Virus record (IMG/VR): IMGVR_UViG_3300009093_000034
Location: 186,001 to 250,000 of that record
DNA: 64,000 nucleotides
Direction: 5' to 3' (one strand)
Part shown: positions 23,475 through 61,988 of the stretch, piece by piece
How the letters are laid out: each line of letters begins with the position of its first letter
Position numbering within the stretch: the stretch's first letter is position 1
Program-made: the position numbers and the translations under genes
The notes under the pieces: generated by a model
Seen by the model: only the letters and a program-made list of their open reading frames with translations
Told to the model about the DNA's origin: nothing
Database searches by the model: none

Positions 23475-23504
23475 AAAAAGGTCCCTTTCGGGACCTTTTC
23501 TTTT
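23475..23504. terminator. Bidirectional rho-independent terminator
   Basis: AAAAGGTCCC-TTTC-GGGACCTTTT between convergent genes. Confidence 0.85.
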
Positions 23505-24462
23505 ACCTGTTCAACTTGACTGCCAACATTGCATCGATTGCTCTTCTAGCAGGCTCAATTAACTCTTCAGCCACAGTCACCTCAGGCAACTCGTTCTGAA
23601 GAGCAAGAAGAACCTTAGGAAGGGTGATCTTCTTCATGTGGGGACAAAGGTTACAGGGCCTGATGAACTCGGTGTCAGGGAAGTTGATGGCTACGTTGTC
23701 GGCCATCGAACACTCGGTGATTAACGCGATCTTCTCAGGCTTGTTCTTCTCCACATACTTGATCATCTGTGCCGTCGAACCAGCAAAGTCTGCAGCTTCA
23801 ACAACAGGAACAGGACATTCAGGGTGAGCGATGACCATCAGCTTCTTTCCATGCTGTTCACGAAGAGTCGTGATCTGTTCAGGAGTGAAGAGCTCATGGA
23901 CCATGCAGCTTCCGTTCCAAAGATGAAGTTTCTTCTTGGTCAGTTTCTGGATGTTTCTTCCAAGGTACTGGTCAGGGATGAAGATGATCTCGTCAGCATC
24001 CAAGCTCTCAACAACCTCGAGAGCGTTACCCGATGTGCAGCAAACATCCGTGACTGCCTTAACCGCAGCACTCGTGTTAACGTAGGTGACGACAGGAGCA
24101 CCAGGATGTTGTCTCTTCATCTCCAAAACGTCTTCAGCTGTGATGCCTTCACTGAGTGAACAACCAGCAGCCAAGTCAGCGATCAGAACCTTCTTGGTAG
24201 GGTTGAGGATCTTCACCGTCTCGGCCATGAAGTGAACACCACACATCACGATGATGTCAGCATCCGTGTTCACAGCTTCCTTTGCCAAAGCAAGAGAATC
24301 ACCAACGATGTCAGCGATCCCATGGAAGATGTCTGGGGTCATGTAGTTGTGGGCCAAGATAAGAGCGTTCTTCTCTTTCTTCAGCCGGTTGATCTCATCG
24401 ATGATGGGACCAATGATGGCCCACTCGACGTCGGGCACAAAGTTCTTAAGTTTGGGATTCAT
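23503..24462 (-). CDS. nadA: Quinolinate synthase NadA (start re-assigned to ATG 24462)
   Basis: ILAHNY, GDSL, CGVHFMAET, GCSL, TYVNTSA, CCTSGNA, GSCMVH, AHPEC, CPHMKK with three Fe-S cysteines; AGGA SD before MNPKL. Confidence 0.97.
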   Translation of the reverse strand: MNPKLKNFVPDVEWAIIGPIIDEINRLKKEKNALILAHNYMTPDIFHGIADIVGDSLALAKEAVNTDADIIVMCGVHFMAETVKILNPTKKVLIADLAAGCSLSEGITAEDVLEMKRQHPGAPVVTYVNTSAAVKAVTDVCCTSGNALEVVESLDADEIIFIPDQYLGRNIQKLTKKKLHLWNGSCMVHELFTPEQITTLREQHGKKLMVIAHPECPVPVVEAADFAGSTAQMIKYVEKNKPEKIALITECSMADNVAINFPDTEFIRPCNLCPHMKKITLPKVLLALQNELPEVTVAEELIEPARRAIDAMLAVKLNR

Positions 24463-24473
24463 GATGTCCTGCC

Positions 24474-24494
24474 TTATGCTCAATCTGAGCATAA
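24474..24494. promoter_or_regulatory. 21-bp inverted repeat matching the NadQ operator consensus
   Basis: TTATGCTCA-ATC-TGAGCATAA, between the -10 element and the nadA start; fits ttATRCTCannntGAGYATaa (consensus recalled from memory). Confidence 0.75.
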
Positions 24495-48712: not shown

Positions 48713-48721
48713 TGAGATATT
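48713..48721 (+). promoter_or_regulatory. TGAGATATT promoter motif
   Basis: Followed by AAGGAGG SD and ATG 48750. Confidence 0.7.
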
Positions 48722-48749
48722 GTACCAGCCCAAAGGAGGTTGGCACAGT

Positions 48750-49265
48750 ATGACGGCTCAATGGATTCTTCTAACAGCTCTCATGCATGGCCAACCTTCA
48801 CTCCCTCAAGTGGCCATGGTTCAGTACAGTTACGAACCGATGGTTTACTTGATCGCTGATGCTTTTCTGGTTCCCAGAGACATCGCGATGAGCGTGGGTT
48901 ACAACGAGAGCACCTTCCGTCCTTGGAAGATCACTAAGAGTGGAAAGGACCATAAAGGTCGTTCCCGTGGTCTTTACCAGATCGACAAGAGCAACGAAAA
49001 AGAACTTGTTGAAAAGTCTGGTCTGAACCATAAGTTTCGTTGGAACAACGCTTACGATTCGGCCTATGTCGGGATCGCTTACTTATCCAGACTTCACAAG
49101 CAGTTTGGAAACTGGATCTTGGCTGTCGCTGCTTACAACGCGGGACCCGGCGCCATCACTAAAGCTCTCAAGACTGGAAAGCGCTGGCCCAAAGAAACTC
49201 AGGTCTACGTAAAGAGAATCTTCGGTGATGATCTTGCTCTTGCCTTTCTGAGATATTATAGTTGA
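48750..49265 (+). CDS. Lytic transglycosylase (SLT domain)
   Basis: NES, GLYQI, YLSRL..FG.W.LAVAAYNAG, ETQ.YV motifs; hydrophobic N-terminus. Confidence 0.9.
   Translation: MTAQWILLTALMHGQPSLPQVAMVQYSYEPMVYLIADAFLVPRDIAMSVGYNESTFRPWKITKSGKDHKGRSRGLYQIDKSNEKELVEKSGLNHKFRWNNAYDSAYVGIAYLSRLHKQFGNWILAVAAYNAGPGAITKALKTGKRWPKETQVYVKRIFGDDLALAFLRYYS
49249..49257 (+). promoter_or_regulatory. TGAGATATT promoter motif
   Basis: Followed by GAGGAG SD and ATG 49276. Confidence 0.65.
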
Positions 49266-49747: not shown

Positions 49748-49985
49748 CCATAGAAGACACTTTGTTGCCACTTACTACGGCGGTCAACGTCGGATGGTTT
49801 GGGACAGAACCTTAATAGACAAAGATCTCGATATCTCCCTTCATGCATTTGTTGGGAACGATTTTACTGACGGACACAGAGGAGAAGCTAGAGCTCACAA
49901 AGGAGCTAAAAAATTTCTTAACTCTCGTCATAGAGCAAAATCTAAAGAAAAGATCCAGGAGATTTTGATTCAAGAAGGAGTTTAA
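49737..49985 (+). CDS. Hypothetical protein
   Basis: Start re-assigned; basic. Confidence 0.5.
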   Translation: MHTNHRRHFVATYYGGQRRMVWDRTLIDKDLDISLHAFVGNDFTDGHRGEARAHKGAKKFLNSRHRAKSKEKIQEILIQEGV

Positions 49986-49986
49986 T

Positions 49987-50322
49987 GTGCCAGACCTTAG
50001 TCAGACCCACTTTGCTAAACGCTTTCAAGAACGGTACCATGAAAGGTTCACTTTTCAAACCAAAACAGAACTTCTTAGGAAGATGAAAGATCCTACGACC
50101 AAAACTTGGCCTAAGGCTCAGAAGGTCTATGGAGACGGAAAACTTCACACTCAGCATGTTTTCATGTTCGAATGGAACGAAGAAAAAACGATTCTTGTAG
50201 TAGATGATCTGGGACATTTTGTCTCTATCTATCCTTATGAACCCTGGAAGAAGGGTGAACGTCAAGCTCGTAGAGAGGCAGGAACATGGCAACCCCCAGA
50301 CGGAAGCATCGAACTATTGTAG
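49987..50322 (+). CDS. Hypothetical protein
   Basis: AAGGAG SD; HF..RFQERY pattern. Confidence 0.55.
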   Translation: MPDLSQTHFAKRFQERYHERFTFQTKTELLRKMKDPTTKTWPKAQKVYGDGKLHTQHVFMFEWNEEKTILVVDDLGHFVSIYPYEPWKKGERQARREAGTWQPPDGSIELL

Positions 50323-50522
50323 TCGGAGGTAAGACCTACCGATACTTGATAGGGCGGTCCAACGTTTCTATCCGAAACGAAGACAACACTCGGTTTGATG
50401 TTGTGGACTTCTCGTGGCTCATGCATACCAGTTGGTCCAACATCGAAAGAGCTCAGTGGAAAAGATACTTCCACATCACACCGAGAGATATAGCTTTGTT
50501 CATCTCAGCTTACCAAAAGTAA
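50286..50522 (+). CDS. Hypothetical protein
   Basis: R.IVVGG..YRY.IG...ITPRDI. Confidence 0.55.
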   Translation: MATPRRKHRTIVVGGKTYRYLIGRSNVSIRNEDNTRFDVVDFSWLMHTSWSNIERAQWKRYFHITPRDIALFISAYQK

Positions 50523-50536
50523 GTTATACTAGTATC

Positions 50537-50782
50537 ATGTTTTCACTCGGATGGTCCTACGAAGCAAGGTCTATTACATTTTCTTTAGACAAGAATGTTA
50601 CGATACACGAATCTGTCAAACAAGAGTTCGAAGTTTTCATAGAGAGTATCTTTGTCAACATGTATGGGAAAGCCATGACAGAGACCTTACGACATCAAAC
50701 AACGAATCAGATAGAGTCTAAGTTATTGTACCTGAAAAGTCAAAACCTAGTGACTATTGATGATCTTCAACTAGCTCACTAA
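50537..50782 (+). CDS. Hypothetical protein (leaderless start)
   Basis: TATACT 6 nt upstream of ATG. Confidence 0.5.
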   Translation: MFSLGWSYEARSITFSLDKNVTIHESVKQEFEVFIESIFVNMYGKAMTETLRHQTTNQIESKLLYLKSQNLVTIDDLQLAH

Positions 50783-50794
50783 CTACAACATCGG

Positions 50795-50824
50795 TAGGAA
50801 TCTCACGGAGAGATTCTGAAAGGA
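50795..50824 (+). promoter_or_regulatory. Leader hairpin copy 1 (GGA loop) before NadM-Nudix
   Basis: TAG-GAATCTC-ACGGA-GAGATTC-TGAAAGGA. Confidence 0.6.
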
Positions 50825-50831
50825 CAACATC

Positions 50832-51905
50832 GTGGATAAGGAATTCACACTAGCAGTTTTTATCTGCCGGGCTCAGCCTTTTCATAAGGCTCATTACGCT
50901 GCTCTTCTCCATGCAGCAAAATATGCTACTCGTTTACTCATCCTAGTAGGAAGTGCAACTAGTGGTCGTAGCACAAGAAATTCTTGGACATATGAAGAAC
51001 GCGTTCGCTTCATTAAAGAATACATCATGTCTAAGGATGAGAGACTCGATTACTCTCACAAGATCGAAATCCGCCCTATCGCAGATAGTGCCTATGATTT
51101 CCATGATTGGCTATTCAGAGCCAAGAAAATCATCCAAGAAACCCAATTCGTAGATCTCCCTCAGGGACAACACAAGATAGCCATCATCCGTCACTACAAA
51201 GACGACACGAGCTACTATCTCAACTACTTCCCAGAATACCAGACCATAGAAACTCCCACGTACGATGATGGGTTTGGAGCTACACAGATCCGTGAAGCTT
51301 ACTTTAGCATAGAGTATGGCGTTGACGGATTTATGTCAAGAATAGCTCTTGAAAAAGAATATCCTTATCTTAAGACGTGGCGAGAAGCCAACAAAGAAAT
51401 TTTCCTCCAACTTCAGCGAGAGTTCGCCTTTGTCAAGGCTTACAAGAAGAGCTGGGAAGGAACTCCCTATCCTGTCAACTTCAGTACCTGCGATGCAGTC
51501 TGTGTCTGCTTGGGTCATGTTCTCTTGATCAAGAGAGGAAGGAATCCTGGAAAAGACCAGCTAGCTTTGCCTGGTGGTTTTTTGAACTTGGATGAGACCT
51601 TTCAGCAAGGCGCTATTCGTGAGCTCCGTGAAGAAACTCACATTGGCCTTTCTGTTCAAACTCTAGAAACTACCATCGCCAATCAACACATCTTCGACCA
51701 TCCTCTTCGTGATCCTCGTGGTCGTTTCATCACCAATGCTTTTCTCTTTGACCTTAAGAAAGAAAAGAGTCTTCCTGAGATAAAAGCAGACGATGATGCT
51801 TCGGAAGCCCTTTGGCTTCCTCTTCAGGATCTTGAGAAGAGAGAAAATGAATTTTTCGCTGACCACGCTCAGATCATCAAGTGGTTCAGGAACAGGATGC
51901 GCTAA
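50832..51905 (+). CDS. Bifunctional NMN/NaMN adenylyltransferase - Nudix ADP-ribose pyrophosphatase (NadM-Nudix)
   Basis: RAQPFHKAH, VGSA, GATQIR; Nudix box GGF...ET....A.RELREET, RDPRGR, ADDDA. Confidence 0.93.
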   Translation: MDKEFTLAVFICRAQPFHKAHYAALLHAAKYATRLLILVGSATSGRSTRNSWTYEERVRFIKEYIMSKDERLDYSHKIEIRPIADSAYDFHDWLFRAKKIIQETQFVDLPQGQHKIAIIRHYKDDTSYYLNYFPEYQTIETPTYDDGFGATQIREAYFSIEYGVDGFMSRIALEKEYPYLKTWREANKEIFLQLQREFAFVKAYKKSWEGTPYPVNFSTCDAVCVCLGHVLLIKRGRNPGKDQLALPGGFLNLDETFQQGAIRELREETHIGLSVQTLETTIANQHIFDHPLRDPRGRFITNAFLFDLKKEKSLPEIKADDDASEALWLPLQDLEKRENEFFADHAQIIKWFRNRMR

Positions 51906-52151
51906 ATGCCAAAACTAGTTCAAGAGCCTTTGATCACATACAAGTGTCAGTGTGGAGCAACTTCTTCAGCAGAGCCTGAAGAGTTCAAAGCCAAGAACAC
52001 TATGCCACCAACTTGGGTCATCAAGTGCGCTTATTGTAACCTTGACGTAGTTTGTTCCCCTAGCGCTATGATCAGTCGTCAAGTTGGATCAATGTCAGAT
52101 CGTGAAGTTCACGGTTACCTAGTCGATAGACTTAGTTTACTTAGAAAATAG
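51906..52151 (+). CDS. Small Zn-ribbon protein
   Basis: CQCG...CAYC. Confidence 0.6.
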   Translation: MPKLVQEPLITYKCQCGATSSAEPEEFKAKNTMPPTWVIKCAYCNLDVVCSPSAMISRQVGSMSDREVHGYLVDRLSLLRK

Positions 52152-52174
52152 ATCACGTTGTGATCTTAGAAATT

Positions 52175-52203
52175 TAGGTCCTCAATGGAGAGGACTGAAA
52201 GGA
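52175..52203 (+). promoter_or_regulatory. Leader hairpin copy 2 (GGA loop) before pncA
   Basis: TAG-GTCCTC-AATGGA-GAGGAC-TGAAAGGA. Confidence 0.6.
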
Positions 52204-52210
52204 GAAAAGA

Positions 52211-53014
52211 ATGATTCGCACAGCACTCGTAATCATCGATCCTCAGAACGACTTCGTTTTGACCGATCAAGATGGTGCTGCTCTTCCTGTTCCAGGAGCT
52301 AAGGCAGACATGGACCGCCTCAGCGACTTTATCAGGAAGAACATCACCAAGTTCAATGAGATTCAGGTCACCCTGGACTCTCACCACCAGTTCCAGATCT
52401 TCCATCCTATGTATTGGACGGATGGAAAGGGTAAGCAGCCGAAGCCTTTCGATAGGATCACGGCCGACGACATTGAGAAGGGAGTTTGGACCACCAAGGT
52501 TCCTTCCCACCGTCAGAGAGCTCTTGAGTACGTCAAGGCTCTGGAGACCGGAGGACGTTATGTCCTCATCATCTGGCCTTACCACTGTCTGATCGGCAGT
52601 TGGGGCGGACAGATCTACGAGCCTCTCTTCAAGACCCTTCTTGATTGGGAGACCACCAACATCGGTATGTTCGGAAAGGTGACCAAGGGTTCCAATCTGT
52701 TCACCGAGCACTACTCGGCTGTCAAGGCTGAAGTTCCGGATCCTCAGGATCCCACAACTCAGTTGAACCAGGACTTCATCGACATTCTGGCAAACCCGGA
52801 CATCGATCAGGTTCTCGTCGCTGGTGAAGCTTTGGACTTCTGTCTTTACAACTCGGCTCTCGACGTGGCCAACGCCCTTGGTGTTGATCAGGCCAAGAAG
52901 ATCAAGGTTCTTGAGGACTGCACAAGTCCCATCTACCCTGATGCTGTGGCTCGTGTCAAGGCAGATCTCGGAGCCAAGGGTGTTCAGTTCATCACCACGG
53001 CTACCGCGTTCTAA
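52211..53014 (+). CDS. pncA: Nicotinamidase (isochorismatase family)
   Basis: IIDPQNDF, LPVPGA, TLDSH, WPYHC, KG, GEALDFC. Confidence 0.9.
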   Translation: MIRTALVIIDPQNDFVLTDQDGAALPVPGAKADMDRLSDFIRKNITKFNEIQVTLDSHHQFQIFHPMYWTDGKGKQPKPFDRITADDIEKGVWTTKVPSHRQRALEYVKALETGGRYVLIIWPYHCLIGSWGGQIYEPLFKTLLDWETTNIGMFGKVTKGSNLFTEHYSAVKAEVPDPQDPTTQLNQDFIDILANPDIDQVLVAGEALDFCLYNSALDVANALGVDQAKKIKVLEDCTSPIYPDAVARVKADLGAKGVQFITTATAF

Positions 53015-53028
53015 AAGGAAGGTTCAAC

Positions 53029-53775
53029 ATGCCTATTTTCAACACTGTTGACGATACTGTCAACGCAAAGATCGGCGGCTCGAACTTCGGATTCTCTCAC
53101 ATCAAGGTGGAGCGTCTGAAGGCCAACGAGTACACCTTGGTCACCATTGCCATTGACATCTCGGGTTCGATCTCTGGGTATCAGTCCCAGTTGGCTCAGA
53201 TGCTCAACACGATTGTCGACGCTTGCCGACCTCCGAAGAACCCTCGAGGAGACAATCTGCTGCTTCGCGTGATCGTGTTCAACGACTACGTCAAGGAAGT
53301 TCACGGCTTCTTGCCTGTGACTTCCATCCAGCAGTACGACGACTCCGATCTTCACACCGGAGGCGGAACAGCTCTCATCGACTCTTTGTACTCGGCCATC
53401 GCCAGTACCAAGACCTACGGTGAAGACCTGGTTGACCAGGACTACGACGTCAACGCCGTTACCTTCGTTGCTACCGACGGACAGGACAATGCTTCGAGCT
53501 ACACCTTGGCTAAGGTCAAGGCTGAACTTGAGGCTGTTGCTACCGAAGAAAAGCTCGACAGCTACCAGACGGTTTTGATTGGTCTTGGTTCCAACCTTGA
53601 TCACTACTTGACCAGAGTGAAGGATGATGGAGGACTGTCTCAGGTGGTTCTCCTTGGAGACGTCACGACTGGAAAGCTTGGAAAGCTTGCTGGTTTCATC
53701 AGCAAGTCCATCTCGAGTTCGTCACAGAGCCTCGGCACTGGAGCTCCTGCCCCGGCTGCTTCGATGGTGTTCTAA
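53029..53775 (+). CDS. vWA domain protein (TerY-like)
   Basis: DISGS MIDAS, GGTAL.D, TDGQDNAS; ISKSISSSSQS C-terminus. Confidence 0.85.
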   Translation: MPIFNTVDDTVNAKIGGSNFGFSHIKVERLKANEYTLVTIAIDISGSISGYQSQLAQMLNTIVDACRPPKNPRGDNLLLRVIVFNDYVKEVHGFLPVTSIQQYDDSDLHTGGGTALIDSLYSAIASTKTYGEDLVDQDYDVNAVTFVATDGQDNASSYTLAKVKAELEAVATEEKLDSYQTVLIGLGSNLDHYLTRVKDDGGLSQVVLLGDVTTGKLGKLAGFISKSISSSSQSLGTGAPAPAASMVF

Positions 53776-53791
53776 GAGTTCTTTGAAGTCT

Positions 53792-53819
53792 TTCCCCTGT
53801 GAAAACAGGGGAACTTCTT
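53792..53819 (+). terminator. Hairpin/terminator after pncA-vWA
   Basis: TTCCCCTGT-GAAA-ACAGGGGAA then CTTCTT. Confidence 0.65.
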
Positions 53820-53831
53820 GAGGGAATTAAA

Positions 53832-54233
53832 ATGACACGATTTGAAGAGCTATCTAAGCAGATCGAAGATCTTCTTGAAAAGAGAGATCAAGACTTGGAA
53901 AAACTCCATAAAGATAGTCCTAACCACTCGTTTGACGACTATCGAAAAACGATTTCTCCTTACATCAAGTTGCTCAAACCATTGAGCATGGAAAAGAGAT
54001 TCGAACAGACTCCTCATTTCACAGAACTTCCTGACTACGGCGATCACATGACCTTTGAACAATTCAAGGCCGCATGTGACGCTGGCGGTTTTGTTGACGA
54101 CGATGGAAGTGGTTTCTATGCCACAGCTACCAACGAAGCAGATATTCCAATCTACCCTAGCGATTTTAAGTACTCGTTCGGGGAGAAGTGGATCAGAAAA
54201 GATTTTACTCATGTTGTTTGGTACAACAAGTAG
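53832..54233 (+). CDS. Hypothetical protein
   Basis: YGDHMT..F...C..G.F.D.DG.G.YA...HVVWYNK. Confidence 0.65.
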   Translation: MTRFEELSKQIEDLLEKRDQDLEKLHKDSPNHSFDDYRKTISPYIKLLKPLSMEKRFEQTPHFTELPDYGDHMTFEQFKAACDAGGFVDDDGSGFYATATNEADIPIYPSDFKYSFGEKWIRKDFTHVVWYNK

Positions 54234-54241
54234 GAAAGAAA

Positions 54242-54493
54242 ATGATTGTGATCAAGCTTACAGAAGATGAAGCTGCTCGGTTAGTTTACTCTTTAGAAGA
54301 TGGAACTGCCAAGCGTATGGAAGGCGGACACTTGACGAACATGGATGTTGTCGTGCCTTTTGCTCAAAAGATCTCTGAGCTAACTGGAAGACATCAAGAT
54401 CTAAAATACTTAGACCAACTTAAGAAACATGAAAATGGATTCATGTTTGCATTTGGTGGTCCAAGAAATTTAGACATCCAGAAAACGGAATAA
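54242..54493 (+). CDS. Hypothetical protein
   Basis: AGGA SD; start re-assigned. Confidence 0.5.
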   Translation: MIVIKLTEDEAARLVYSLEDGTAKRMEGGHLTNMDVVVPFAQKISELTGRHQDLKYLDQLKKHENGFMFAFGGPRNLDIQKTE

Positions 54494-54663
54494 TAAAATG
54501 AAGATTCAATACCTAGCTTGGCTCTCCTCTGAAGGTGAGAGACGACATAAGAATGAGAAAGGTGTTCTTTGGGCCGGAATGGTTCGTAACCTTCCTGAAC
54601 AGTACAAGCATCTTCTTGATGCCAAAGACACACGTCAGTATGCTATTGTTTGGGACTTAGATC

Positions 54664-54945
54664 ATGTTCAGTAAAGGTACCAAGGTCAAGCTCAAGCCTT
54701 TTTGGCATGCCAATTCTCCTGAGATGTCTAAGTGGATGAAAGACCATGAGCATGATGTCTTCACAGTCAAGAACAGCTGGAGTCTTTTGATCCAACTTGA
54801 AGGTGTTGATTTTAGCATCTCAGCCATTTTGTTGGACGAGGTTCACATAGAAGAACCTAAGGTCAAAGACATTTACGAAAATAGTCTCTATCCCCATGCT
54901 CTCTTGGATAGAGACTACTTAGAAAGGAGACAAGCAAATGGGTAA
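54664..54945 (+). CDS. Hypothetical protein
   Basis: F.KG.KVKL SH3/KOW-like N-terminus. Confidence 0.55.
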   Translation: MFSKGTKVKLKPFWHANSPEMSKWMKDHEHDVFTVKNSWSLLIQLEGVDFSISAILLDEVHIEEPKVKDIYENSLYPHALLDRDYLERRQANG

Positions 54946-55417
54946 AGAAGTACCTGTTGGCTATTCTAAAGCCGAGACCTACGAGCACAAAGCTCTGGTT
55001 CTCAAGTACCTCAATCGTGTGATTCAGGATCTTATCGCCAGAGCAGAGGTCCATGACGATTCCAAGTTGGAAGAACCTGAACTCTCTGCTTTCGATAAGG
55101 CAGCTAGAGATTATCCTTTAGGTACTTTGACCTATGGATCTCCAGAATACCAAGAATCTGTGAGACTTCTTGGCCCTGCTCTTGAACATCACTATGCCGT
55201 CAATCGTCATCACCCTCAGCATTTCCCAGACGGAGTTCGAGGAATGAACTTGGTGGACTTGATCGAAATGATCTGCGATTGGAAAGCTTCGACTTTCCGT
55301 CAGCCAGGCGGAAATCTTTTGAAGTCCATCCACATGAACGCTACTCCTGATAAGTTCAACTACACTCAAGAGTTGTCTCAGATCTTTGAGAACACAGCAG
55401 ACTTCTTGGAGGACTAA
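54938..55417 (+). CDS. DUF5662-like HD-related protein
   Basis: HK..V, HDDSKL, HHY..NRHHP.H, EM.CDW. Confidence 0.8.
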   Translation: MGKEVPVGYSKAETYEHKALVLKYLNRVIQDLIARAEVHDDSKLEEPELSAFDKAARDYPLGTLTYGSPEYQESVRLLGPALEHHYAVNRHHPQHFPDGVRGMNLVDLIEMICDWKASTFRQPGGNLLKSIHMNATPDKFNYTQELSQIFENTADFLED

Positions 55418-55687
55418 ATGGAACTTCAAGCCGAGTTTGATTACACACTTAGAAAATTGAACCACCTCGTTAGTAAGGTTAAAAACCACAATGAGTTTGA
55501 GTTCGAGGTTGCTATCTTCAGAGATGGACCTTACTACACGATCATTATCGGTGGAAATGGTCAGATGAACTTTGGAGACATGAGCAAGGCTTGTTTCCAA
55601 AAACTTAGAGATGAAGGCTATCTTGAGGAAGATTCTTATGGTGGTGGAAAGAATCGAAGCTACTACAAGTTTCTTAAAAAGTCATGA
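55418..55687 (+). CDS. Hypothetical protein
   Basis: GGAGG SD. Confidence 0.55.
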   Translation: MELQAEFDYTLRKLNHLVSKVKNHNEFEFEVAIFRDGPYYTIIIGGNGQMNFGDMSKACFQKLRDEGYLEEDSYGGGKNRSYYKFLKKS

Positions 55688-56007
55688 CATTTCACGAAAA
55701 GTACTTGAAGCTGATAAGGTACAGTGAAGATGTAGCTCAGCTGGATCTTCATTATCCTAAGTTGACTAGGGGGTTACTAGACATTGAGTCTATCTACTCA
55801 GACGAAGTGTATTATTGTCATTTGAATTGTTGTTCAGAGTTCTTAAAAAGAATAATTTCCGGTCCAGGAGAAAAACCTAAGAACATCAGCAAAGAACAAA
55901 TGACCAAACTCTATAAAGAGTGTTGTAGGCCCTTCAAGATTATTCTCCAACAGAAATTTTCCTTTGAGATGCAAAATCTGGGTTTACTCGTATTCGAGAA
56001 TTTATAA
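55684..56007 (+). CDS. Hypothetical protein, tandem paralog 1
   Basis: LLD..S.YSDEVY...IL..KF..EMQ..G shared with next gene. Confidence 0.65.
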   Translation: MTFHEKYLKLIRYSEDVAQLDLHYPKLTRGLLDIESIYSDEVYYCHLNCCSEFLKRIISGPGEKPKNISKEQMTKLYKECCRPFKIILQQKFSFEMQNLGLLVFENL

Positions 56008-56008
56008 A

Positions 56009-56311
56009 ATGACACACGAAAATTTTACCTATTTGAGATTAAACTCAGATATTGTACACGCCCTGTTCTCAGAGTTTTCTCAAAAGACTGAAGAGTTGTT
56101 GGACTGTGATTCGTTCTACTCTGATGAGGTTTACCAGGCCTTTGAAAGAGAGACACATCATCGGTACTCATATTCTAGCCTGAAGTACATGGAAGGCGGT
56201 TCTGATGAAGAGTGTGAACTCTATCGGAAAAGAATGCTCTTAGCTAGAGAAAACTTTGAGAATATCCTCAGAAAAAAGTTTGCATGGGAAATGCAAACAA
56301 TAGGAGTTTGA
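56009..56311 (+). CDS. Hypothetical protein, tandem paralog 2
   Basis: See paralog 1; start MTHENF parallels MTFHEKY. Confidence 0.65.
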   Translation: MTHENFTYLRLNSDIVHALFSEFSQKTEELLDCDSFYSDEVYQAFERETHHRYSYSSLKYMEGGSDEECELYRKRMLLARENFENILRKKFAWEMQTIGV

Positions 56312-56313
56312 AC

Positions 56314-57243: not shown

Positions 57244-57245
57244 CC

Positions 57246-57497
57246 GTGGACAACAACACTCAGAAGTACTTCATCGCTTCCTACCTTTCCTACGCGAACA
57301 TCGACGACTATGGTGACTTCACCTATACGTTGACCACGCAGGAAGTTTGGGCTGATACCCCTGAAGAGGTTGTTGGTCTCCTTGAGACCCATCACAACTT
57401 TGCTCGGGTTCGTCCCATCGACTACAACAACATCCAGGTCTTGGAGATCTCTCCGAAGACCGCTGAGGAGATCATCGCTCGAAGCCCGATGATCTAA
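57246..57497 (+). CDS. Hypothetical protein
   Basis: GTG start after AAGGTGG. Confidence 0.5.
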   Translation: MDNNTQKYFIASYLSYANIDDYGDFTYTLTTQEVWADTPEEVVGLLETHHNFARVRPIDYNNIQVLEISPKTAEEIIARSPMI

Positions 57498-57504
57498 GAA
57501 CAAC

Positions 57505-57951: not shown

Positions 57952-58292
57952 AATTTATCGTCTTAGCCCTTTTTCTTGTCTTAACTTCTTGCGGAGGACA
58001 CCCTCCAGTTTCGACCTTAAGTCCCCAACAAAAACTTCAACTCTTGGATAGACGATGGTGGGGAGATGGCTTCGGACAGTCTTATGACTACACCTTTAGT
58101 GAAAGATTGTCTCTTCTGACTCCTCCTGTGATCTTCTACAAAGAAGCGCCCATCGTGAGCAGAGGAGTCTCGGATTATACTAAGGTCTATCTTCAAGACG
58201 CCAACGGTGCAATCCTTACGATGAGCTTTCCGTTAGAAGATGCGTGGTTGAAAGCCTTCAAGGTTGGCGACGTGATTGTAAAGGAAAAGTGA
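57948..58292 (+). CDS. Lipoprotein
   Basis: MKFIVLALFLVLTSC lipobox; ATGA overlap; AAGGA SD. Confidence 0.7.
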   Translation: MKFIVLALFLVLTSCGGHPPVSTLSPQQKLQLLDRRWWGDGFGQSYDYTFSERLSLLTPPVIFYKEAPIVSRGVSDYTKVYLQDANGAILTMSFPLEDAWLKAFKVGDVIVKEK

Positions 58293-59146
58293 AAGTGCTT
58301 AAGTACAACGTCAATGACCGGGTGGTCATCAAGTCTTTAGAAGAAATTCAAAAGTGTGAAGAGTACTCTAATGCTAATGCAGCTGGAGAAGAAGTAGAAA
58401 GATTCATATCCGACATGGAACCATTTTGTGGTTGTGTGTTAACTATTTCATCAAAAGGATTTGAATCAGATCAAGCTCCATCCTACTCTGTTTTAGAACC
58501 TGGAGCAAGTAGATGGCATTGGCAAGATTGGATGATCTCCCGTCTTGCTGAACATGTTGAACCAGACAAACCTTGGCCTAGGATCAAGACCATGATCATT
58601 GACCAAGGTAGAGACGACCAAGATCATCTTCGTCAAGATGAAGGAGTCTATCGTATTCGATACGATATTTCCTACATCGCTATCGCTCCTTCCAAAGACG
58701 GAGCCATCTTGATTGGAAGCCCCGTTCACATTGAAAGTTCAGGTGATGGTGAGTACACTCTATGGGGTATCATGAGGGTGGGAACAAGACATCCTTACCC
58801 TGTCAATGACGTCCGTCACTTTAACAGTCACTCGGATTTGAAAAAAGCTCTGGAAGGCGTCGAGGTCATCCTTGACAAGGCCTACGCAAGAAAGAAAATT
58901 GACCTTCTCCAAGCAGAGATCACGAAGCTAGAGGAAGACTACAAGCTCTACTCTATCGGAGACGATACTAGAGAAGGTCTTTTTGCTGGATATATCTCAA
59001 GTGCTGAAGAACTCTCTAAGTTCCCAGGAATAGAGAACAGTTGGATCGAAGCCTCAATCTCTTTCAAAGGCGGAGTCAATGGTCTGAGAGATGTCAAGAT
59101 CGGAGATCGTTTCAAGTTCTGGGACAAGGCATGGCATCCACTATGA
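58289..59146 (+). CDS. Hypothetical protein
   Basis: KYNVNDRVVIKS...M..FCG...TI N-terminal phage domain. Confidence 0.6.
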   Translation: MKVLKYNVNDRVVIKSLEEIQKCEEYSNANAAGEEVERFISDMEPFCGCVLTISSKGFESDQAPSYSVLEPGASRWHWQDWMISRLAEHVEPDKPWPRIKTMIIDQGRDDQDHLRQDEGVYRIRYDISYIAIAPSKDGAILIGSPVHIESSGDGEYTLWGIMRVGTRHPYPVNDVRHFNSHSDLKKALEGVEVILDKAYARKKIDLLQAEITKLEEDYKLYSIGDDTREGLFAGYISSAEELSKFPGIENSWIEASISFKGGVNGLRDVKIGDRFKFWDKAWHPL

Positions 59147-60027
59147 TTGACTATGTGATGAAACAAAAACCCAAGGCCTTCATCTGCCAAGACTACATCG
59201 TTGTCGACATCTTTGACTTCGGTGCAAAGTTTCAGATCCCTTTCATTGCCGTTACAGACGGTTGTACAGGTGGCCAAAGGACAGAGACTGGAAGCCAGTT
59301 GCTCTGTCACATCTCAAGGATCGAAACCCTCAAGTATCTTGAGGAGTGGGACCTTGGACGTCCTGACACTGGTTTTGGTCGATCAGACCTTCTTGAGATC
59401 TTGAACAGGATTCAAAACAAGTTGACAGCGATCTCGACAGAGTTGAGCTTCAACTATGATCAGTTGCTTGCTACTCTTCAATTTCTGTTCATCATTGACA
59501 ACCATGTCTATGGTATCAGGTCTGGGGACGGTGTGATGTTCACCTTCGATAAGAAGAAGATCATCAGAACCTCAGTGATCGAGTACACTCCTAACATGCC
59601 AAACTACTTGGCTTATAGAACCAACCCTGTTGCTTGGAGAGATCTTAGAACCACGGTTCATGGAGATCCTTACAGACCTTGTTTCAAAACCGTAACAACG
59701 TATGAGAGCACAGCTACCGAACCTACTACGACAGAAGACAGACAAGACTACTTTGAGATCACTTTCATTGATGAAGAGTTAAGCCCTGATTTAACCCATA
59801 TCGGACTTGCTTCCGATGGCGTTGAGTCCTACATGAACGAGAGTTCGAATCAAGGAATTCCTGTTTGGGGTTTGATCAAAGAACTCTCTGAGATCAAGAA
59901 CCCTGAAGGAAACTTCTTGGTCCGAAGATTTCAGAAGATGGACAAGGGCTATCACTCAGCTGGCTTTGAGAACAAAGACGACGTAGCTATTGCCATGATC
60001 GATCTAGAAGCTTACAGAAGACTTTGA
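59143..60027 (+). CDS. PP2C-family protein phosphatase
   Basis: CQD, AVTDGC.G...GS, ATL, GDG, LASDG, DDVA. Confidence 0.88.
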   Translation: MIDYVMKQKPKAFICQDYIVVDIFDFGAKFQIPFIAVTDGCTGGQRTETGSQLLCHISRIETLKYLEEWDLGRPDTGFGRSDLLEILNRIQNKLTAISTELSFNYDQLLATLQFLFIIDNHVYGIRSGDGVMFTFDKKKIIRTSVIEYTPNMPNYLAYRTNPVAWRDLRTTVHGDPYRPCFKTVTTYESTATEPTTTEDRQDYFEITFIDEELSPDLTHIGLASDGVESYMNESSNQGIPVWGLIKELSEIKNPEGNFLVRRFQKMDKGYHSAGFENKDDVAIAMIDLEAYRRL

Positions 60028-60028
60028 C

Positions 60029-60313
60029 ATGGAACAAACTTGCGATACTTGTTTCTTTTGTAGGGACATAATTGTAGGATCCAGTTGTTTTGGAAGATGG
60101 CCAGCTAGAGAGATCACAAGTTGTATTGTAGGTCGTGAAGGCGATCGTTTTCCAAAACCTGTTCCCGTTTCTAAATCAAACACTTGTCACAAGTGGGCTT
60201 CCAAGAACGAAAAATTCAAGATTCAAAAATTGCTAGATGGTAGAGGAATTTGGACACCAGCAGAAAAATGGGTCCCACCTTATAATCCAGAGAGGTCTAA
60301 GTACTATGACTAA
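60029..60313 (+). CDS. Cys-rich small protein
   Basis: CDTC.FC...C...C.KW. Confidence 0.55.
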   Translation: MEQTCDTCFFCRDIIVGSSCFGRWPAREITSCIVGREGDRFPKPVPVSKSNTCHKWASKNEKFKIQKLLDGRGIWTPAEKWVPPYNPERSKYYD

Positions 60314-61988
60314 AACAGTTGTCTACCAAAACAAGAACATCGTTCTCTCTGATAGCAACTACCTCTCTGCAGGTGGAGAAGGAGAGATCTATCTCAAAGG
60401 TGGAGTGATCTTCAAGATCTACACCAAGCCTGTGAATCCTCAGCTTCTTGACAAGATCAAAGAACTCTCGGTTTTGGATCGGCCGAACATCATCAGGCCT
60501 CTAGAGTTAATCTTTGATCCAAACACAAATCAACCTGTTGGTTACACCATGGCCTACGCAGATAACAGCGTTGGTCTTCCTCTTCTCTTCACCACTTCCT
60601 TCTTAGACCGGACCAACATCAGTCTTAAGTCAATCCAAGAGTTGATCGAAGAGATGGCCAAGACCTTGGCCTTCATCCACTCGAAACAGGTCTTGGTGGT
60701 CGACCATAACGAGAACAACATTCTAGTCTCCAAGGGAAAGAAGTACACACAACCTTACTTCATCGATGTTGATAGTTGGCAGACTTCCAGGTTTCCTGCT
60801 ACTGCCATCATGCCATCGATCAAGGACTTCAGAGCTTCAAAGTTTAGTGAGTTCACCGATTGGTACTCTCACGCCGTTCTCTCGTTTCAACTCTTGACAG
60901 GCATCCACCCTTACAAGGGAAAGCATGACGTCTTCAAGAACATTGAAGAACGAAGAAAGAACTTGGTCTCTGTGTTCCATAAGGATGTCCGTCTCCCAGC
61001 TTCGGTAAGAGACTTTGCCAACATCCCTCCTGCTTACCGATCATTGTATGAAGATATCTTCGACAAGGGTCTTGAGGTTCTTCCTCCAGCCATGGTCGCT
61101 ACTCCTACTGTCAGAATCAAGAGAAAGTACTCGAACGTTCACTTCATCGTTGAGAAGATCCTTGAGACCAAGGAACCTATCGTCTACAGCGAGTGGATCA
61201 ACGGGACTCTTGTGGCTGCCACAGAACATTACGTCTATGTTAACAAGGTTGAGTACAACAGACCTACACCTGATGCCAAGGTTTTCTTTGGAGACGAGGG
61301 AGGTCTTTACTTTGCCTTTATGGAAAATGGAGACCTGACCATTCAGCCGGTGAAGAAAGGTGAAAATGTCAAGGACATCTATATCAAGCCTACGAAGCTC
61401 TTCACCATTGGTGGACGATTGTACGCTCTTGATATTGGACGGCTCTATGAGTTCTCTCTTCGTGAGAAGATGAATGTCTTAATCACTGTGATGTCTCCTA
61501 TGATCAACACCTTGTCTACCAAGGTTTACGATCAAGTGGTTCACACAGAGATGTTCGGAGAGAAGTACTTCTACTGTTTGCCTGCAACCAAGACCTTCGT
61601 TCCTTTTCACGCTAAGGGTTTGAAAGAATACAAGATCTGGGATGCTCAAATGAGAGGAACAAGACTCCAGATCATCGCTACTACGAAGACTGGTGATCCT
61701 GTCATCATCACTTATCAGCTCAGCAAGACCTGGGACAAAGGGCTCTTGATGAACCAAGAGCCTCTCCCGGCTATTCGAGAGTTGAACTCGATCACCATTG
61801 CTAATGGGATGGTAGTTGATTACGATGCAGATGACGATCAAGTGAAGATCACAAGTGCAGACCTTACTCAAGAGAAGATCATCAAAGATGCTGGTCTTCC
61901 TCAAGGTGCTCAATTGGTTTCTGGTTCGACAAGCGTATACTACCAAGTAGACAACGAGGTCAGAAAGATCTCGATGAAACAACCATGA
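60306..61988 (+). CDS. Ser/Thr protein kinase with C-terminal beta-rich domain
   Basis: GGEGEIY, FKIY, IH...VVDHNENNILV, FIDVDSW, TDW...LLTGIHPYKG. Confidence 0.88.
   Translation: MTKTVVYQNKNIVLSDSNYLSAGGEGEIYLKGGVIFKIYTKPVNPQLLDKIKELSVLDRPNIIRPLELIFDPNTNQPVGYTMAYADNSVGLPLLFTTSFLDRTNISLKSIQELIEEMAKTLAFIHSKQVLVVDHNENNILVSKGKKYTQPYFIDVDSWQTSRFPATAIMPSIKDFRASKFSEFTDWYSHAVLSFQLLTGIHPYKGKHDVFKNIEERRKNLVSVFHKDVRLPASVRDFANIPPAYRSLYEDIFDKGLEVLPPAMVATPTVRIKRKYSNVHFIVEKILETKEPIVYSEWINGTLVAATEHYVYVNKVEYNRPTPDAKVFFGDEGGLYFAFMENGDLTIQPVKKGENVKDIYIKPTKLFTIGGRLYALDIGRLYEFSLREKMNVLITVMSPMINTLSTKVYDQVVHTEMFGEKYFYCLPATKTFVPFHAKGLKEYKIWDAQMRGTRLQIIATTKTGDPVIITYQLSKTWDKGLLMNQEPLPAIRELNSITIANGMVVDYDADDDQVKITSADLTQEKIIKDAGLPQGAQLVSGSTSVYYQVDNEVRKISMKQP

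What the first reader, a model, noticed from the sequence alone, without database searches (positions are those of the whole stretch)
50832..53014. Deamidated-route NAD rebuilding set (NadA + PncA + NadM-Nudix), unlike described phage NAD reconstitution pathways
Seen: nadA at 23.5 kb, NadM-Nudix and pncA; no pncB, nadV, nadB, nadC or nadE in this window. Known: phage NARP1 (Adps+Namat) and NARP2 (Nampt+Nmnat) rebuild NAD by amidated routes against Thoeris/SIR2-type NAD depletion. PncA and NadA both feed NaMN, and Nudix recycles ADP-ribose. Inference: this phage may counter NAD-depleting defence by Preiss-Handler salvage plus a de novo boost.
Basis: partly seen in the sequence, partly recalled or inferred. 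Interest (0 to 1): 0.65.

Follow-up and report, generated by a model that had tools for sequence, protein, structure and literature searches.

The report
Jumbo phage nicotinamide-to-NAD salvage set
A 306-kb soil phage encodes all four enzymes that turn nicotinamide back into NAD by the deamidated (Preiss-Handler) route, plus a host-derived quinolinate synthase. Its nicotinamidase gene heads a widespread phage four-gene cassette with a vWA protein, a phosphatase and a kinase that I could not find described.

Summary
Window 50832-53014 encodes a NadM-Nudix fusion, an 81-aa Cys-rich ORF and a 267-aa nicotinamidase-like protein; NadA is at 23503-24492 (minus strand).

The missing steps lie just beyond the window in the same complete 305,833-bp phage genome: glutamine-dependent NadE at C1:256510-258393 and PncB at C1:261773-262969. 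I found no NadV, Adps/Prs, PnuC, NadR, NadB, NadC or second adenylyltransferase. The phage therefore carries a full Nam->Na->NaMN->NaAD->NAD set and is not NARP1, NARP2 or NARP3.

The PncA is a long-form subfamily. It keeps every nicotinamidase catalytic and metal residue, and its model matches nicotinamidase structures. In bacteria the same four families form PncA-PncB-NadE-NadM operons.

NadA is a separate acquisition. It is 87% identical to bacterial nadA genes that sit in nadA-nadB operons, and none of 25 related viral records has it.

PncA is also the first gene of a conserved cassette, PncA-vWA-PP2C-kinase(beta-propeller). In an independent scan, 79 of 79 viral loci holding this vWA had PncA upstream.

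Preiss-Handler sets in jumbo phages were already catalogued in 2024, so the pathway is a new variant of a known kind. The cassette link appears undescribed. A counter-defence role is plausible but untested.

The parts
23503..24492 (-). Quinolinate synthase NadA (329 aa; another gene call starts at M11, giving 319 aa). It is the only minus-strand gene between two plus-strand genes and looks like a host-derived auxiliary gene.
   Evidence: NCBIfam NF006878 372 bits > 294 and TIGR00550 308 > 263. The nearest homologues are 87% and 81% identical and sit in bacterial nadA-nadB operons. GC is 49%, against 40% in the flanks and 60% in the bacterial relatives; nucleotide identity is 75%.
50832..51905 (+). 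NadM-Nudix: an N-terminal NMN/NaMN adenylyltransferase fused to a C-terminal ADP-ribose pyrophosphatase-type Nudix domain. It is the only nucleotidyltransferase of this class in the genome.
   Evidence: The Nudix box G-x5-E-x7-REL-x-EET is present. The N-terminal motif reads PFHKAH where the solved homologues read PFHxGH.
51906..52151 (+). 81-aa ORF whose ATG directly follows the NadM stop codon. It has CxC...CxxC cysteine pairs (zinc-ribbon-like) and no homologue in the related loci.
   Evidence: No Pfam, NCBIfam or PHROG hit.
52211..53014 (+). Long-form nicotinamidase (PncA-like, 267 aa). It is the first gene of the conserved PncA-vWA-PP2C-kinase cassette.
   Evidence: D10, D56, H58, W122-P123-x-H125-C126, K159 and C211 are invariant in 25 homologues. 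AF2 pLDDT is 96. The Foldseek top matches down to rank 18 are all nicotinamidases/pyrazinamidases, TM about 0.8 on the target. The PDB sequence hits that reach significance (E <= 0.01) are all nicotinamidases. A strong AAGGAG ribosome-binding site lies upstream.
53029..53775 (+). vWA-domain protein (248 aa) with an intact MIDAS motif and a conserved Ser/Gln-rich C-terminal tail. It starts 14 nt after PncA.
   Evidence: D43-x-S-x-S47, T114 and T149-D150-G151 are invariant in 21 homologues. Pfam VWA matches 10 of 21 members, best E 7e-9. It lies immediately downstream of PncA in 79 of 79 viral loci found by the vWA alone.
59131..60027 (+). PP2C-like Ser/Thr phosphatase. The ORF is open from 59041; the likely start is the ATG at 59131.
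   Evidence: Pfam PP2C_2 37 bits > 24. The invariant Asp motifs DG, GDG, SDG and DD are present. It is conserved between the vWA gene and the kinase gene in related loci.
60237..61988 (+). Ser/Thr protein kinase (residues about 25-290) fused to a C-terminal beta-propeller (about 300-583).
   Evidence: Pfam Pkinase 33 bits > 31.7. G46, G47, K60, D156 and D177 are invariant and N161 is nearly invariant. The AF2 model has pLDDT 83.5. Foldseek matches the LRRK2 kinase-WD40 region and the Nup133 and Vps18 propellers.

Best explanation
The phage carries a complete, loosely clustered set for rebuilding NAD from nicotinamide by the deamidated Preiss-Handler route. All genes are on the plus strand between genome positions 236.8 and 263.0 kb.

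Proposed steps:
1. Long-form PncA deamidates nicotinamide to nicotinate.
2. PncB makes NaMN from nicotinate and PRPP.
3. The NadM domain adenylates NaMN to NaAD.
4. The two-domain, glutamine-dependent NadE amidates NaAD to NAD.
5. The Nudix domain fused to NadM splits ADP-ribose to AMP and ribose-5-phosphate, which the host can turn back into PRPP and ATP.

A separately acquired, host-like NadA adds capacity at the quinolinate step of de novo synthesis. It depends on host NadB and NadC.

The set takes in both products of NAD-cleaving defence enzymes, nicotinamide and ADP-ribose. Its most likely use is therefore to keep NAD up during infection, including against NAD-depleting defences.

PncA is co-transcribed with, and evolutionarily locked to, a vWA-PP2C-kinase(beta-propeller) triad, so the salvage step is probably coupled to a phospho-signalling switch.

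Shown here: gene identities, active-site conservation, completeness of the pathway, absence of the NARP1/2/3 hallmark genes, and the gene linkages.

Inferred: substrate specificities, the order of the last two steps, the role of the triad, and any counter-defence effect.
For: Pathway genes:
- PncB: NF003704 471 bits > 379 and TIGR01514 408 > 270.
- NadE: CN_hydrolase plus NAD_synthase domains; the TIGR00552 domain scores 100 > 64.
- NadM-Nudix is the only CTP_transf_like gene in the genome.

PncA:
- It keeps the whole nicotinamidase triad and the metal site.
- Its model matches nicotinamidase structures.

Same families as operons elsewhere:
- PncA-PncB-NadE-NadM operons occur in Andreprevotia chitinilytica (L092), Cupriavidus basilensis (L105), L128 and L130.
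- PncA-NadM or PncA-PncB pairs occur in L078, L115, L112, L101 and L072.

Viral relatives:
- In related viral records that are at least 90% complete, 8 of 13 have a NAPRTase-family gene and 7 of 13 have NadE.
- Some loci interleave the salvage genes with the cassette: L119 is PncB-NadE-PncA-vWA-PP2C-STK-Nudix, L068 is similar, and L024 is similar.
- Nudix homologues of the NadM C-terminal domain lie within about 0.1-2 kb of PncA in more than 20 loci.

Absences in this genome: no NadV, Prs/Adps (21), PnuC (22), NadB (20) or NadC (14).

Cassette linkage: 79 of 79 loci. Contig L149 has the same five-gene order.

Precedent: NARP2, which uses a KVP40 Nmnat of this same family, restores NAD and defeats Thoeris and DSR2 (bioRxiv 10.1101/2024.02.11.579819).
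Against: - No experiment or expression data. The only run holding the sequence is a DNA rhizosphere metagenome, probably the source sample.
- PncA scores far below the curated PncA cut-off (29.9 against 174 bits).
- NadM-Nudix and NadE score below their NCBIfam equivalog cut-offs.
- The NadM N-terminal motif is HKAH rather than HxGH.
- Characterised bacterial NadM enzymes prefer NMN to NaMN (my recollection of the Synechocystis and Francisella work). Step 3 may therefore not be NaMN adenylation.
- The four-step route costs more ATP and is slower than the one-step Nampt route, which is an odd choice for an emergency counter-measure.
- Four records of about 110-130 kb carry PncA plus the triad without PncB or NadE (G003, G005 and G011 are classed as provirus, G015 as linear). 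PncA's conserved partner is thus the triad rather than the pathway.
- The genes are spread over 26 kb and are not an operon.
- The promoter and terminator scan was no better than shuffled sequence.
Confidence: 0.6

Rival explanations
1. The genes are a general metabolic boost rather than a counter-defence. They raise NAD supply for a very large phage with a long, demanding infection, whatever defence the host has (the 'NAD-jumbo phage' idea).
For: - PMC11662467 reports 174 of 668 gut jumbo phages with complete NAD salvage or Preiss-Handler sets and argues for self-sufficiency.
- NARP2 raises NAD even without a defence system.
- NadA feeds de novo synthesis, which has no link to NADase products.
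- The genome is 306 kb with 50 tRNA genes, typical of phages that bring their own metabolism.
Against: - The entry substrate (nicotinamide) and the Nudix substrate (ADP-ribose) are exactly the products of NADase defences.
- The genome has no NAD-dependent DNA ligase, so no obvious phage NAD consumer was found.
- The two readings are not exclusive.
Confidence: 0.3
2. PncA works mainly as part of the PncA-vWA-PP2C-kinase cassette, and that cassette's job is not NAD rebuilding.

Two forms of this idea:
1. It is a TerY-P-like, phage-borne switch or exclusion system.
2. It is a device that removes nicotinamide, for example to relieve product inhibition of NAD-using enzymes or to erase a signal.

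On this reading the link to the other NAD genes is secondary.
For: - 79 of 79 viral loci found by the vWA alone have PncA directly upstream, and 72 of 80 have the kinase downstream.
- Intergenic gaps are 4-16 nt in several loci; the gap is 14 nt here.
- Four records of about 110-130 kb have the cassette without PncB or NadE.
- The vWA + PP2C + STK order is that of the TerY-P triad, which can act as a stand-alone anti-phage system (PMC11090510).
- PncA and vWA form a local GC island at 52-53%, against 43.7% for the genome.
Against: - PADLOC TerY-P models match none of the four proteins.
- The kinase carries a beta-propeller, not the Zn-ribbon or OB fold of TerY-P.
- The same long-form PncA sits in plain PncA-PncB-NadE-NadM operons with no triad.
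- PncB, NadE or a Nudix gene is inserted in or next to the cassette in many loci. That ties the cassette to NAD metabolism rather than separating it.
Confidence: 0.2
3. The last two steps run in the Francisella order. NadE amidates NaMN to NMN, and NadM then adenylates NMN to NAD, so no NaAD is formed. The start and end of the pathway are the same but the chemistry differs. This is a variant of the best explanation rather than an exclusive rival.
For: - NadM-Nudix aligns end to end with the Francisella tularensis enzyme (2qjt, E 8e-54).
- It is the only adenylyltransferase in the genome.
- From my own knowledge of the literature: characterised NadM enzymes prefer NMN, and Francisella uses an NMN synthetase form of NadE.
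Against: - The phage NadE is a 627-aa two-domain glutamine-dependent enzyme whose best match is the NAD+ synthase model PRK13981. As I recall, the Francisella NMN synthetase is a short single-domain NadE.
- No specificity residues were tested here.
Confidence: 0.25

Closest known systems
NARP2 (phage Nampt + Nmnat, e.g. Vibrio phage KVP40; bioRxiv 10.1101/2024.02.11.579819)
   Same: - It starts from nicotinamide and ends with a phage adenylyltransferase. As I recall, the KVP40 Nmnat is of the NadM-Nudix type, like this one.
- 483 GenBank phage records hold a homologue of the window's NadM-Nudix at up to 38% identity.
- The goal is NAD restoration.
   Different: - No Nampt/NadV anywhere in the genome.
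- The single Nampt step is replaced by PncA + PncB, and an amidation step by NadE is needed.
- The intermediates are deamidated (nicotinate, NaMN, NaAD).
'NAD-jumbo phages' with Preiss-Handler clusters (pncB-nadD-nadE; PMC11662467)
   Same: - A genome over 200 kb that encodes every step of a Preiss-Handler route.
- PncB and NadE are present.
- The evidence is bioinformatic only.
   Different: - Here the route starts one step earlier, at nicotinamide, through a long-form PncA.
- It uses a NadM-Nudix fusion instead of NadD.
- It adds NadA, whereas that paper states the phages lack the de novo pathway.
- PncA is tied to a vWA-PP2C-kinase cassette that the paper does not mention.
Bacterial PncA-PncB-NadE-NadM(Nudix) operons (Andreprevotia chitinilytica L092, Cupriavidus basilensis L105, L128, L130)
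   Same: The same four protein families, including the same long-form PncA subfamily (42-47% identity) and a full NadM-Nudix fusion (33-38%).
   Different: - In bacteria the four genes are contiguous, and no triad was found next to them in the loci examined.
- In the phage they are spread over 26 kb, and PncA is followed by vWA, PP2C and the kinase.
TerY-P triad (TerY-like vWA + PP2C + Ser/Thr kinase; PMC11090510, citing Anantharaman 2012 and Gao 2020)
   Same: - The same three domain types in the same gene order.
- The vWA has an intact MIDAS motif.
- The kinase and phosphatase both look active.
   Different: - No PADLOC TerY-P model matches.
- The kinase ends in a beta-propeller rather than a Zn-ribbon or OB fold.
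- A nicotinamidase always precedes it.
- It is carried by large phages rather than found in defence islands.
NARP1 (Adps + Namat) and NARP3 (PnuC + NadR; PMC13464706)
   Same: Both are phage-encoded NAD reconstitution pathways.
   Different: - No Prs-like Adps.
- The only NAPRTase-family gene is a bona fide PncB.
- No PnuC and no NadR-type adenylyltransferase.

Membership tests
Nicotinamidase / pyrazinamidase (PncA) | Catalytic triad Asp-Lys-Cys of the cysteine hydrolase fold | tested here: met
   D10, K159 and C211 are invariant in 25 homologues. They align with the Asp, Lys and Cys positions of yeast Pnc1 in the HMMER alignment.
Nicotinamidase / pyrazinamidase (PncA) | Metal site (Asp, His, His, including the WPxHC motif) that binds the pyridine nitrogen. 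As I recall, it distinguishes nicotinamidases from other isochorismatase-like hydrolases. | tested here: met
   D56, H58 and W122-P123-x-H125-C126 are invariant. IIWPYHC aligns with ILWPVHC of Pnc1.
Nicotinamidase / pyrazinamidase (PncA) | Nicotinamidase fold | tested here: met
   AF2 pLDDT 96.2. The Foldseek top matches down to rank 18 are all nicotinamidases/pyrazinamidases, E 4e-15 to 4e-9, TM on the target about 0.8. About 50 extra residues lie between H58 and W122.
Nicotinamidase / pyrazinamidase (PncA) | Curated family score | tested here: not met
   NCBIfam PRK11609 29.9 bits against a cut-off of 174. Pfam Isochorismatase 36 > 27, but only the C-terminal third matches. This is a divergent long-form subfamily with at least 4944 relatives.
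Nicotinamidase / pyrazinamidase (PncA) | Hydrolysis of nicotinamide to nicotinate | not testable with these tools
   Needs an enzyme assay. The genomic context with PncB, NadE and NadM in bacteria supports it.
NadM-Nudix bifunctional NMN adenylyltransferase / ADP-ribose pyrophosphatase | Two-domain architecture aligned over the full length to solved members | tested here: met
   2qjo E 2.4e-63 over residues 5-354; 2qjt E 8e-54 over residues 2-350.
NadM-Nudix bifunctional NMN adenylyltransferase / ADP-ribose pyrophosphatase | Nucleotidyltransferase (H/T)xGH motif and Nudix box | tested here: inconclusive
   The Nudix box G-x5-E-x7-REL-x-EET is intact. The N-terminal motif is CRAQPFHKAH where the solved homologues read GRFQPFHxGH: both His are kept, but Gly is replaced by Ala. 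All NCBIfam equivalog scores are below cut-off; the best is 288.9 against 397.
Quinolinate synthase NadA | Curated equivalog score and the Cys-bearing motifs | tested here: met
   NF006878 372 > 294 and TIGR00550 308 > 263. The peptides VMCGVHFM, WNGSCMVH and CNLCPHMK are present. Assigning these Cys residues to the 4Fe-4S cluster is from memory.
Nicotinate phosphoribosyltransferase PncB | Curated score, both domains, and PncB rather than NadV/Namat | tested here: met
   NF003704 471 > 379 and TIGR01514 408 > 270. NAPRTase_N and NAPRTase domains are both present. The NadV model NF006629 has no match in the genome.
Glutamine-dependent NAD synthetase NadE | N-terminal CN-hydrolase (glutaminase) domain plus C-terminal NAD synthase domain | tested here: met
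   PF00795 52 bits and PF02540 114 bits. The TIGR00552 domain scores 100 > 64, but the full-length equivalog PRK13981 scores 307 < 479.
NARP2 | Phage Nampt (NadV) together with Nmnat | tested here: not met
   An Nmnat-type NadM-Nudix is present. Nampt is absent: PF04095 finds only PncB, and NF006629 finds nothing.
NARP1 | Prs-like Adps plus Namat | tested here: not met
   No Pribosyltran_N match in the genome at E <= 1. The single NAPRTase-family gene is PncB.
NARP3 | PnuC transporter plus NadR | tested here: not met
   No NMN_transporter match. NadM is the only CTP_transf_like gene.
TerY-P triad | Adjacent vWA, PP2C and Ser/Thr kinase genes in that order | tested here: met
   In this window a 5.3-kb insert separates the vWA gene from the PP2C gene.
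TerY-P triad | Match to TerY-P defence models, and a kinase fused to a Zn-ribbon or OB fold | tested here: not met
   No PADLOC hit for the vWA or PP2C proteins; the kinase gives only weak generic kinase hits. The kinase C-terminus is a beta-propeller.
'NAD-jumbo phage' (PMC11662467) | Phage genome over 200 kb with at least one complete NAD synthesis pathway | tested here: met
   305,833 bp with terminal repeats and 100% estimated completeness. PncA, PncB, NadM and NadE are all present.

The most novel reading that the evidence does not exclude
PncA-vWA-PP2C-kinase(beta-propeller) is an undescribed functional unit of large phages. It would be a phosphorylation-controlled module that processes the products of NAD cleavage: nicotinamide through PncA and, with the often adjacent Nudix gene, ADP-ribose. 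Together with PncB, NadM and NadE it would form a fourth, deamidated NAD reconstitution pathway that lets jumbo phages escape NAD-depleting immunity.
Probability: 0.25. Interest if true: 0.8.

Novelty: new variant of a known kind. Interest (0 to 1): 0.6.

Why it matters
Three phage NAD reconstitution pathways have been shown to defeat NAD-depleting immunity, and all three are amidated: NARP1, NARP2 and NARP3. A deamidated route that starts at nicotinamide would be a fourth. It would extend the Preiss-Handler gene sets already catalogued in jumbo phages by one step, back to nicotinamide itself.

This phage offers a complete and compact test set of four genes, plus NadA. The long-form PncA subfamily is large, with at least 4944 relatives, and I know of no characterised member.

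The strict coupling of PncA to a vWA-phosphatase-kinase triad in over a hundred large-phage contigs is the unexpected part. It suggests that NAD salvage in these phages is wired to a signalling switch. It also gives a concrete handle on what TerY-P-like triads sense or control, which remains an open question.

Tried and rejected
- Complex prediction of PncA with the vWA protein: no verdict (score 0.02). This is not evidence either way.
- Megablast of 50000-54500 against GenBank phages: no match. The lineage has no close deposited relative, and 8 of 10 large window ORFs have no PHROG hit.
- PADLOC scan of the cassette proteins: nothing beyond weak generic kinase hits.
- A profile of the vWA family against PDB sequences: no hit.
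- Promoter and terminator scan of 49800-62300: counts equal to shuffled sequence, so there is no operon evidence from it.
- Whole-genome searches for NadC, NadB, Prs, PnuC, NadV and NAD-dependent ligase: all empty with working controls.
- NadA as part of the conserved set: rejected. 0 of 25 related records have it. The 14 IMG/VR contigs that do carry a 49-57% identical NadA share little or nothing else with this genome.
The best named relative is Spirochaeta cellobiosiphila at 66%, so the host stays unknown.
- Sequencing runs: one rhizosphere DNA run holds the stretch, probably the source sample, and there are no RNA runs. I did not use read laying because it could add no independent information.
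- Literature searches for nicotinamidase with vWA, TerY, PP2C or Thoeris in phages: nothing relevant.
Full report
**What is at the coordinates**

The window is positions 186001-250000 of a single 305,833-base virus record with direct terminal repeats, rated complete. Three genes lie within 50832-53014, on the plus strand.

- **NadM-Nudix, 50832-51905 (357 aa).** It matches the NCBIfam bifunctional NMN adenylyltransferase/Nudix models at E 5.8e-86, though below their equivalog cut-offs. It matches Pfam NUDIX and CTP_transf_like above cut-off. It aligns end to end with the solved NadM-Nudix enzymes of Synechocystis (2qjo) and Francisella (2qjt). The Nudix box is intact. The nucleotidyltransferase motif reads PFHKAH where the solved enzymes read PFHxGH.
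- **An 81-aa ORF, 51906-52151.** Its ATG directly follows the NadM stop codon. It has CxC...CxxC cysteine pairs and no relatives in the related loci.
- **A 267-aa isochorismatase-superfamily protein, 52211-53014.**

NadA lies at 23503-24492 on the minus strand and scores above the curated quinolinate synthase cut-offs.

**Is the PncA-like protein a nicotinamidase?**

Profile scores are weak: Pfam matches only residues 185-264, and NCBIfam PncA scores 29.9 against a cut-off of 174. The other evidence is strong.

- The PDB sequence hits that reach significance are all nicotinamidases. The alignment puts IIDPQNDF, IIWPYHC, VTKGS and ALDFC on the matching Pnc1 motifs.
- In an alignment of 25 homologues at 30-59% identity, D10, D56, H58, W122-P123-x-H125-C126, K159 and C211 are invariant. 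These are the Asp-Lys-Cys triad and the Asp-His-His metal site.
- The AlphaFold model is very confident (pLDDT 96).
- Its Foldseek top matches down to rank 18 are all nicotinamidases or pyrazinamidases, with TM about 0.8 on the target.

The protein is about 50-80 residues longer than classical PncA because of an insert between the second and third metal ligands. It belongs to a large family of at least 4944 relatives, mostly about 265 aa long. In nicotinamidases the metal binds the free pyridine nitrogen (established knowledge), so an intact metal site argues for nicotinamide rather than a ribosylated substrate. That last point is inference.

**The rest of the pathway**

I searched the whole genome.

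- The NAPRTase family has one match, a 398-aa gene at C1:261773-262969. It scores above the curated PncB cut-offs (471 > 379 and 408 > 270) and has both PncB domains.
- NAD synthase has one match, a 627-aa gene at C1:256510-258393 with CN-hydrolase and NAD-synthase domains. This is a glutamine-dependent NadE.
- There is no NadV by either the family model or a NadV-specific model.
- There is no NadC (14), NadB (20), Prs-like protein (21) or PnuC (22).
- NadM is the only adenylyltransferase of this class (73).
- There is no NAD-dependent ligase (72).

The phage therefore has every enzyme for nicotinamide -> nicotinate -> NaMN -> NaAD -> NAD, and it lacks the defining genes of NARP1, NARP2 and NARP3. 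The genes are all on the plus strand within 26 kb (236.8-263.0 kb) but are not contiguous. The ORFs between them gave only a polysaccharide deacetylase.

**Context elsewhere supports a salvage role**

I examined 80 loci from bacterial and archaeal assemblies that hold the long-form PncA.

- Contiguous PncA-PncB-NadE-NadM(Nudix) operons occur in Andreprevotia chitinilytica, Cupriavidus basilensis and two MAGs.
- PncA-NadM or PncA-PncB pairs occur in Chitiniphilus, Variovorax, a Capsulimonadaceae chromosome and others.
- The NadM matches in these operons cover the full fusion.

Among viral records that hold this PncA and are at least 90% complete, 8 of 13 have a NAPRTase-family gene and 7 of 13 have NadE.

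In GenBank phages the pieces are rare apart from NadM-Nudix. NadM-Nudix occurs in 483 records, PncB in 13, NadE in 10 and long-form PncA in 4. These include the 595-kb uncultured phage LR756511, which has PncA, PncB and NadE, and Agrobacterium phage Atu_ph07, which has PncB and NadE.

**NadA is a separate story**

- Its closest relatives, 87% and 81% identical, lie in bacterial contigs of about 62% GC. There they sit in nadA-nadB operons beside gatCAB and an NrtR-like regulator.
- The phage copy has 49% GC in a 40% GC neighbourhood and is 75% identical at the DNA level.
- None of 25 related viral records has NadA.
- The few IMG/VR contigs that do have one share little or nothing else with this genome.
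- Without phage NadB and NadC it can only add capacity to the host's own de novo pathway.

It is best read as an independently captured host gene, not as part of the conserved set.

**The unexpected part: PncA heads a conserved cassette**

The gene 14 nt downstream of PncA (53029-53775) encodes a vWA protein with an invariant MIDAS motif (DxSxS, T, TDG) and a conserved Ser/Gln-rich tail.

Further downstream are a PP2C-like phosphatase (59131-60027; PP2C_2 above cut-off with invariant Asp motifs) and a protein kinase (60237-61988). The kinase has an invariant glycine loop, Lys and catalytic and metal-binding Asp residues, and a nearly invariant Asn. Its C-terminal 280 residues fold as a beta-propeller: the model has pLDDT 83.5 and matches the LRRK2 kinase-WD40 region and the Nup133 and Vps18 propellers.

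The linkage is strong.

- In 48 viral loci found with PncA, about 28 had the vWA gene immediately downstream and 25 had the kinase, always in the order PncA-vWA-PP2C-kinase, while the other neighbours differed.
- An independent scan starting from the vWA family found 80 further viral loci. All 79 with enough upstream sequence had PncA upstream, and 72 had the kinase downstream.
- The cassette also occurs in 33-38 of the 80 assembly loci, including a Bradyrhizobium embrapense scaffold.
- PncB, NadE or a Nudix gene homologous to the NadM C-terminal domain is often next to or inside the cassette. Examples are L119, L068, L024 and architectures such as PncA-vWA-PncB-NadE-PP2C-STK.
- Contig L149 has the same order as the window, NadM-PncA-vWA-PP2C-kinase, at 32-57% identity.
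- In the window, 5.3 kb of unknown genes separates the vWA gene from the PP2C gene.

By architecture this is a TerY-P-like triad as described in PMC11090510. However, no PADLOC model matches it, and the kinase's C-terminal domain differs from the TerY-P type. I found no paper that links a nicotinamidase to such a triad.

**How it most likely works**

Shown:
- The phage encodes all four enzymes, and their active-site residues are kept wherever I checked them (PncA fully; NadM with one motif departure).
- The same families form operons in bacteria.
- The hallmark genes of NARP1, NARP2 and NARP3 are absent.
- PncA is locked to the triad.

Inferred:
- The set turns nicotinamide, the product of SIR2-, TIR- and related NADases, into NAD.
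- The Nudix domain recycles ADP-ribose.
- NadA tops up NaMN supply through the host's NadB and NadC.

The purpose may be counter-defence, general NAD supply, or both. The triad may regulate or depend on PncA, but how is unknown. A complex prediction for PncA with the vWA protein gave no verdict.

The order of the last two steps is also open. NadM enzymes characterised in bacteria prefer NMN (my recollection), so a Francisella-like NaMN -> NMN -> NAD order is possible. Against that, the phage NadE is a long glutamine-dependent type.

**Comparison with what is known, and verdict**

Relative to NARP1 and NARP2 (bioRxiv 10.1101/2024.02.11.579819) and NARP3 (PMC13464706), this is a different, deamidated route. 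It shares only the NadM-type adenylyltransferase with NARP2.

Relative to the 'NAD-jumbo phages' of PMC11662467, it is another jumbo phage with a complete Preiss-Handler set. It differs in four ways: it enters at nicotinamide through PncA, it uses NadM-Nudix instead of NadD, it carries NadA, and its PncA belongs to the triad cassette.

I rate it a new variant of a known kind. The most interesting lead is the PncA-vWA-PP2C-kinase cassette, which is widespread in large phages and, as far as I could find, undescribed.

Noticed in passing
window 52001-54000 (PncA 52211-53014, vWA 53029-53775): Local GC island. PncA is 52.5% GC and the vWA gene 53.0%, against 43.7% for the genome and 44-45% for NadM, PP2C and the kinase. 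The PncA-vWA pair may have been replaced or acquired more recently than the rest of the cassette.
   Followed up: partly
G000:C1:89383-159849 (outside the window): ARAGORN finds 50 tRNA genes in a 70-kb stretch, covering most amino acids. They include one with a CTA anticodon (called tRNA-Pyl, a possible amber suppressor) and two with odd anticodon loops.
   Followed up: no
window 51906-52151: An 81-aa ORF that abuts the NadM stop codon, with CxC...CxxC cysteines (zinc-ribbon-like). It has no family hit and no homologue in about 50 related loci.
   Followed up: partly
window 53799-59146: A 5.3-kb insert between the vWA and PP2C genes that other cassette loci lack. It holds a 144-aa ORF (phrog_14149), a DUF5662 protein (54938-55417), and 319-aa and 300-aa ORFs with no hits.
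   Followed up: no
window 1-48000: Eight of ten large ORFs (411-1123 aa) have no PHROG hit. Only an SbcC-like protein (25366-27450) and a DnaB-like helicase (30016-31458) were recognised. An SLT lytic transglycosylase lies at 48720-49265, and there is a weak PLP-enzyme match at 46738-47625. The phage lineage looks poorly sampled.
   Followed up: no
L055, L058, L060, L063, L065, L082, L113 (Competibacteraceae and Contendobacter MAG contigs): A third recurrent context: long-form PncA, then a weak PP2C-like match (19-23% identity), then a Nudix-only homologue of the NadM C-terminal domain. No vWA or kinase was detected.
   Followed up: no
L024 (IMGVR_UViG_3300035208_007133): One viral contig carries two long-form PncA paralogues flanking the triad: PncB-NadE-PncA-vWA-PP2C-STK-PncA2-Nudix.
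   Followed up: no
L027, L028, L037, L041, L043, L045, L046, L048 (IMG/VR GVMAG records): More distant relatives of the long-form PncA (23-37% identity) occur in giant-virus metagenome bins without the vWA, PP2C or kinase genes.
   Followed up: no
G000:C1:255708-256541 (L229:8209-9042): A polysaccharide deacetylase (PF01522, 96 bits) lies just upstream of NadE and overlaps its start by 32 nt.
   Followed up: no
L147 and L148 (bacterial contigs with the closest NadA): The bacterial nadA-nadB operons closest to the phage NadA lie 2.5-3 kb (L147) and about 6.5 kb (L148) from an NrtR-type (Nudix-related, ADP-ribose-responsive) regulator gene. If this lineage is the host, a phage ADP-ribose pyrophosphatase could also affect host NAD regulation.
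   Followed up: no
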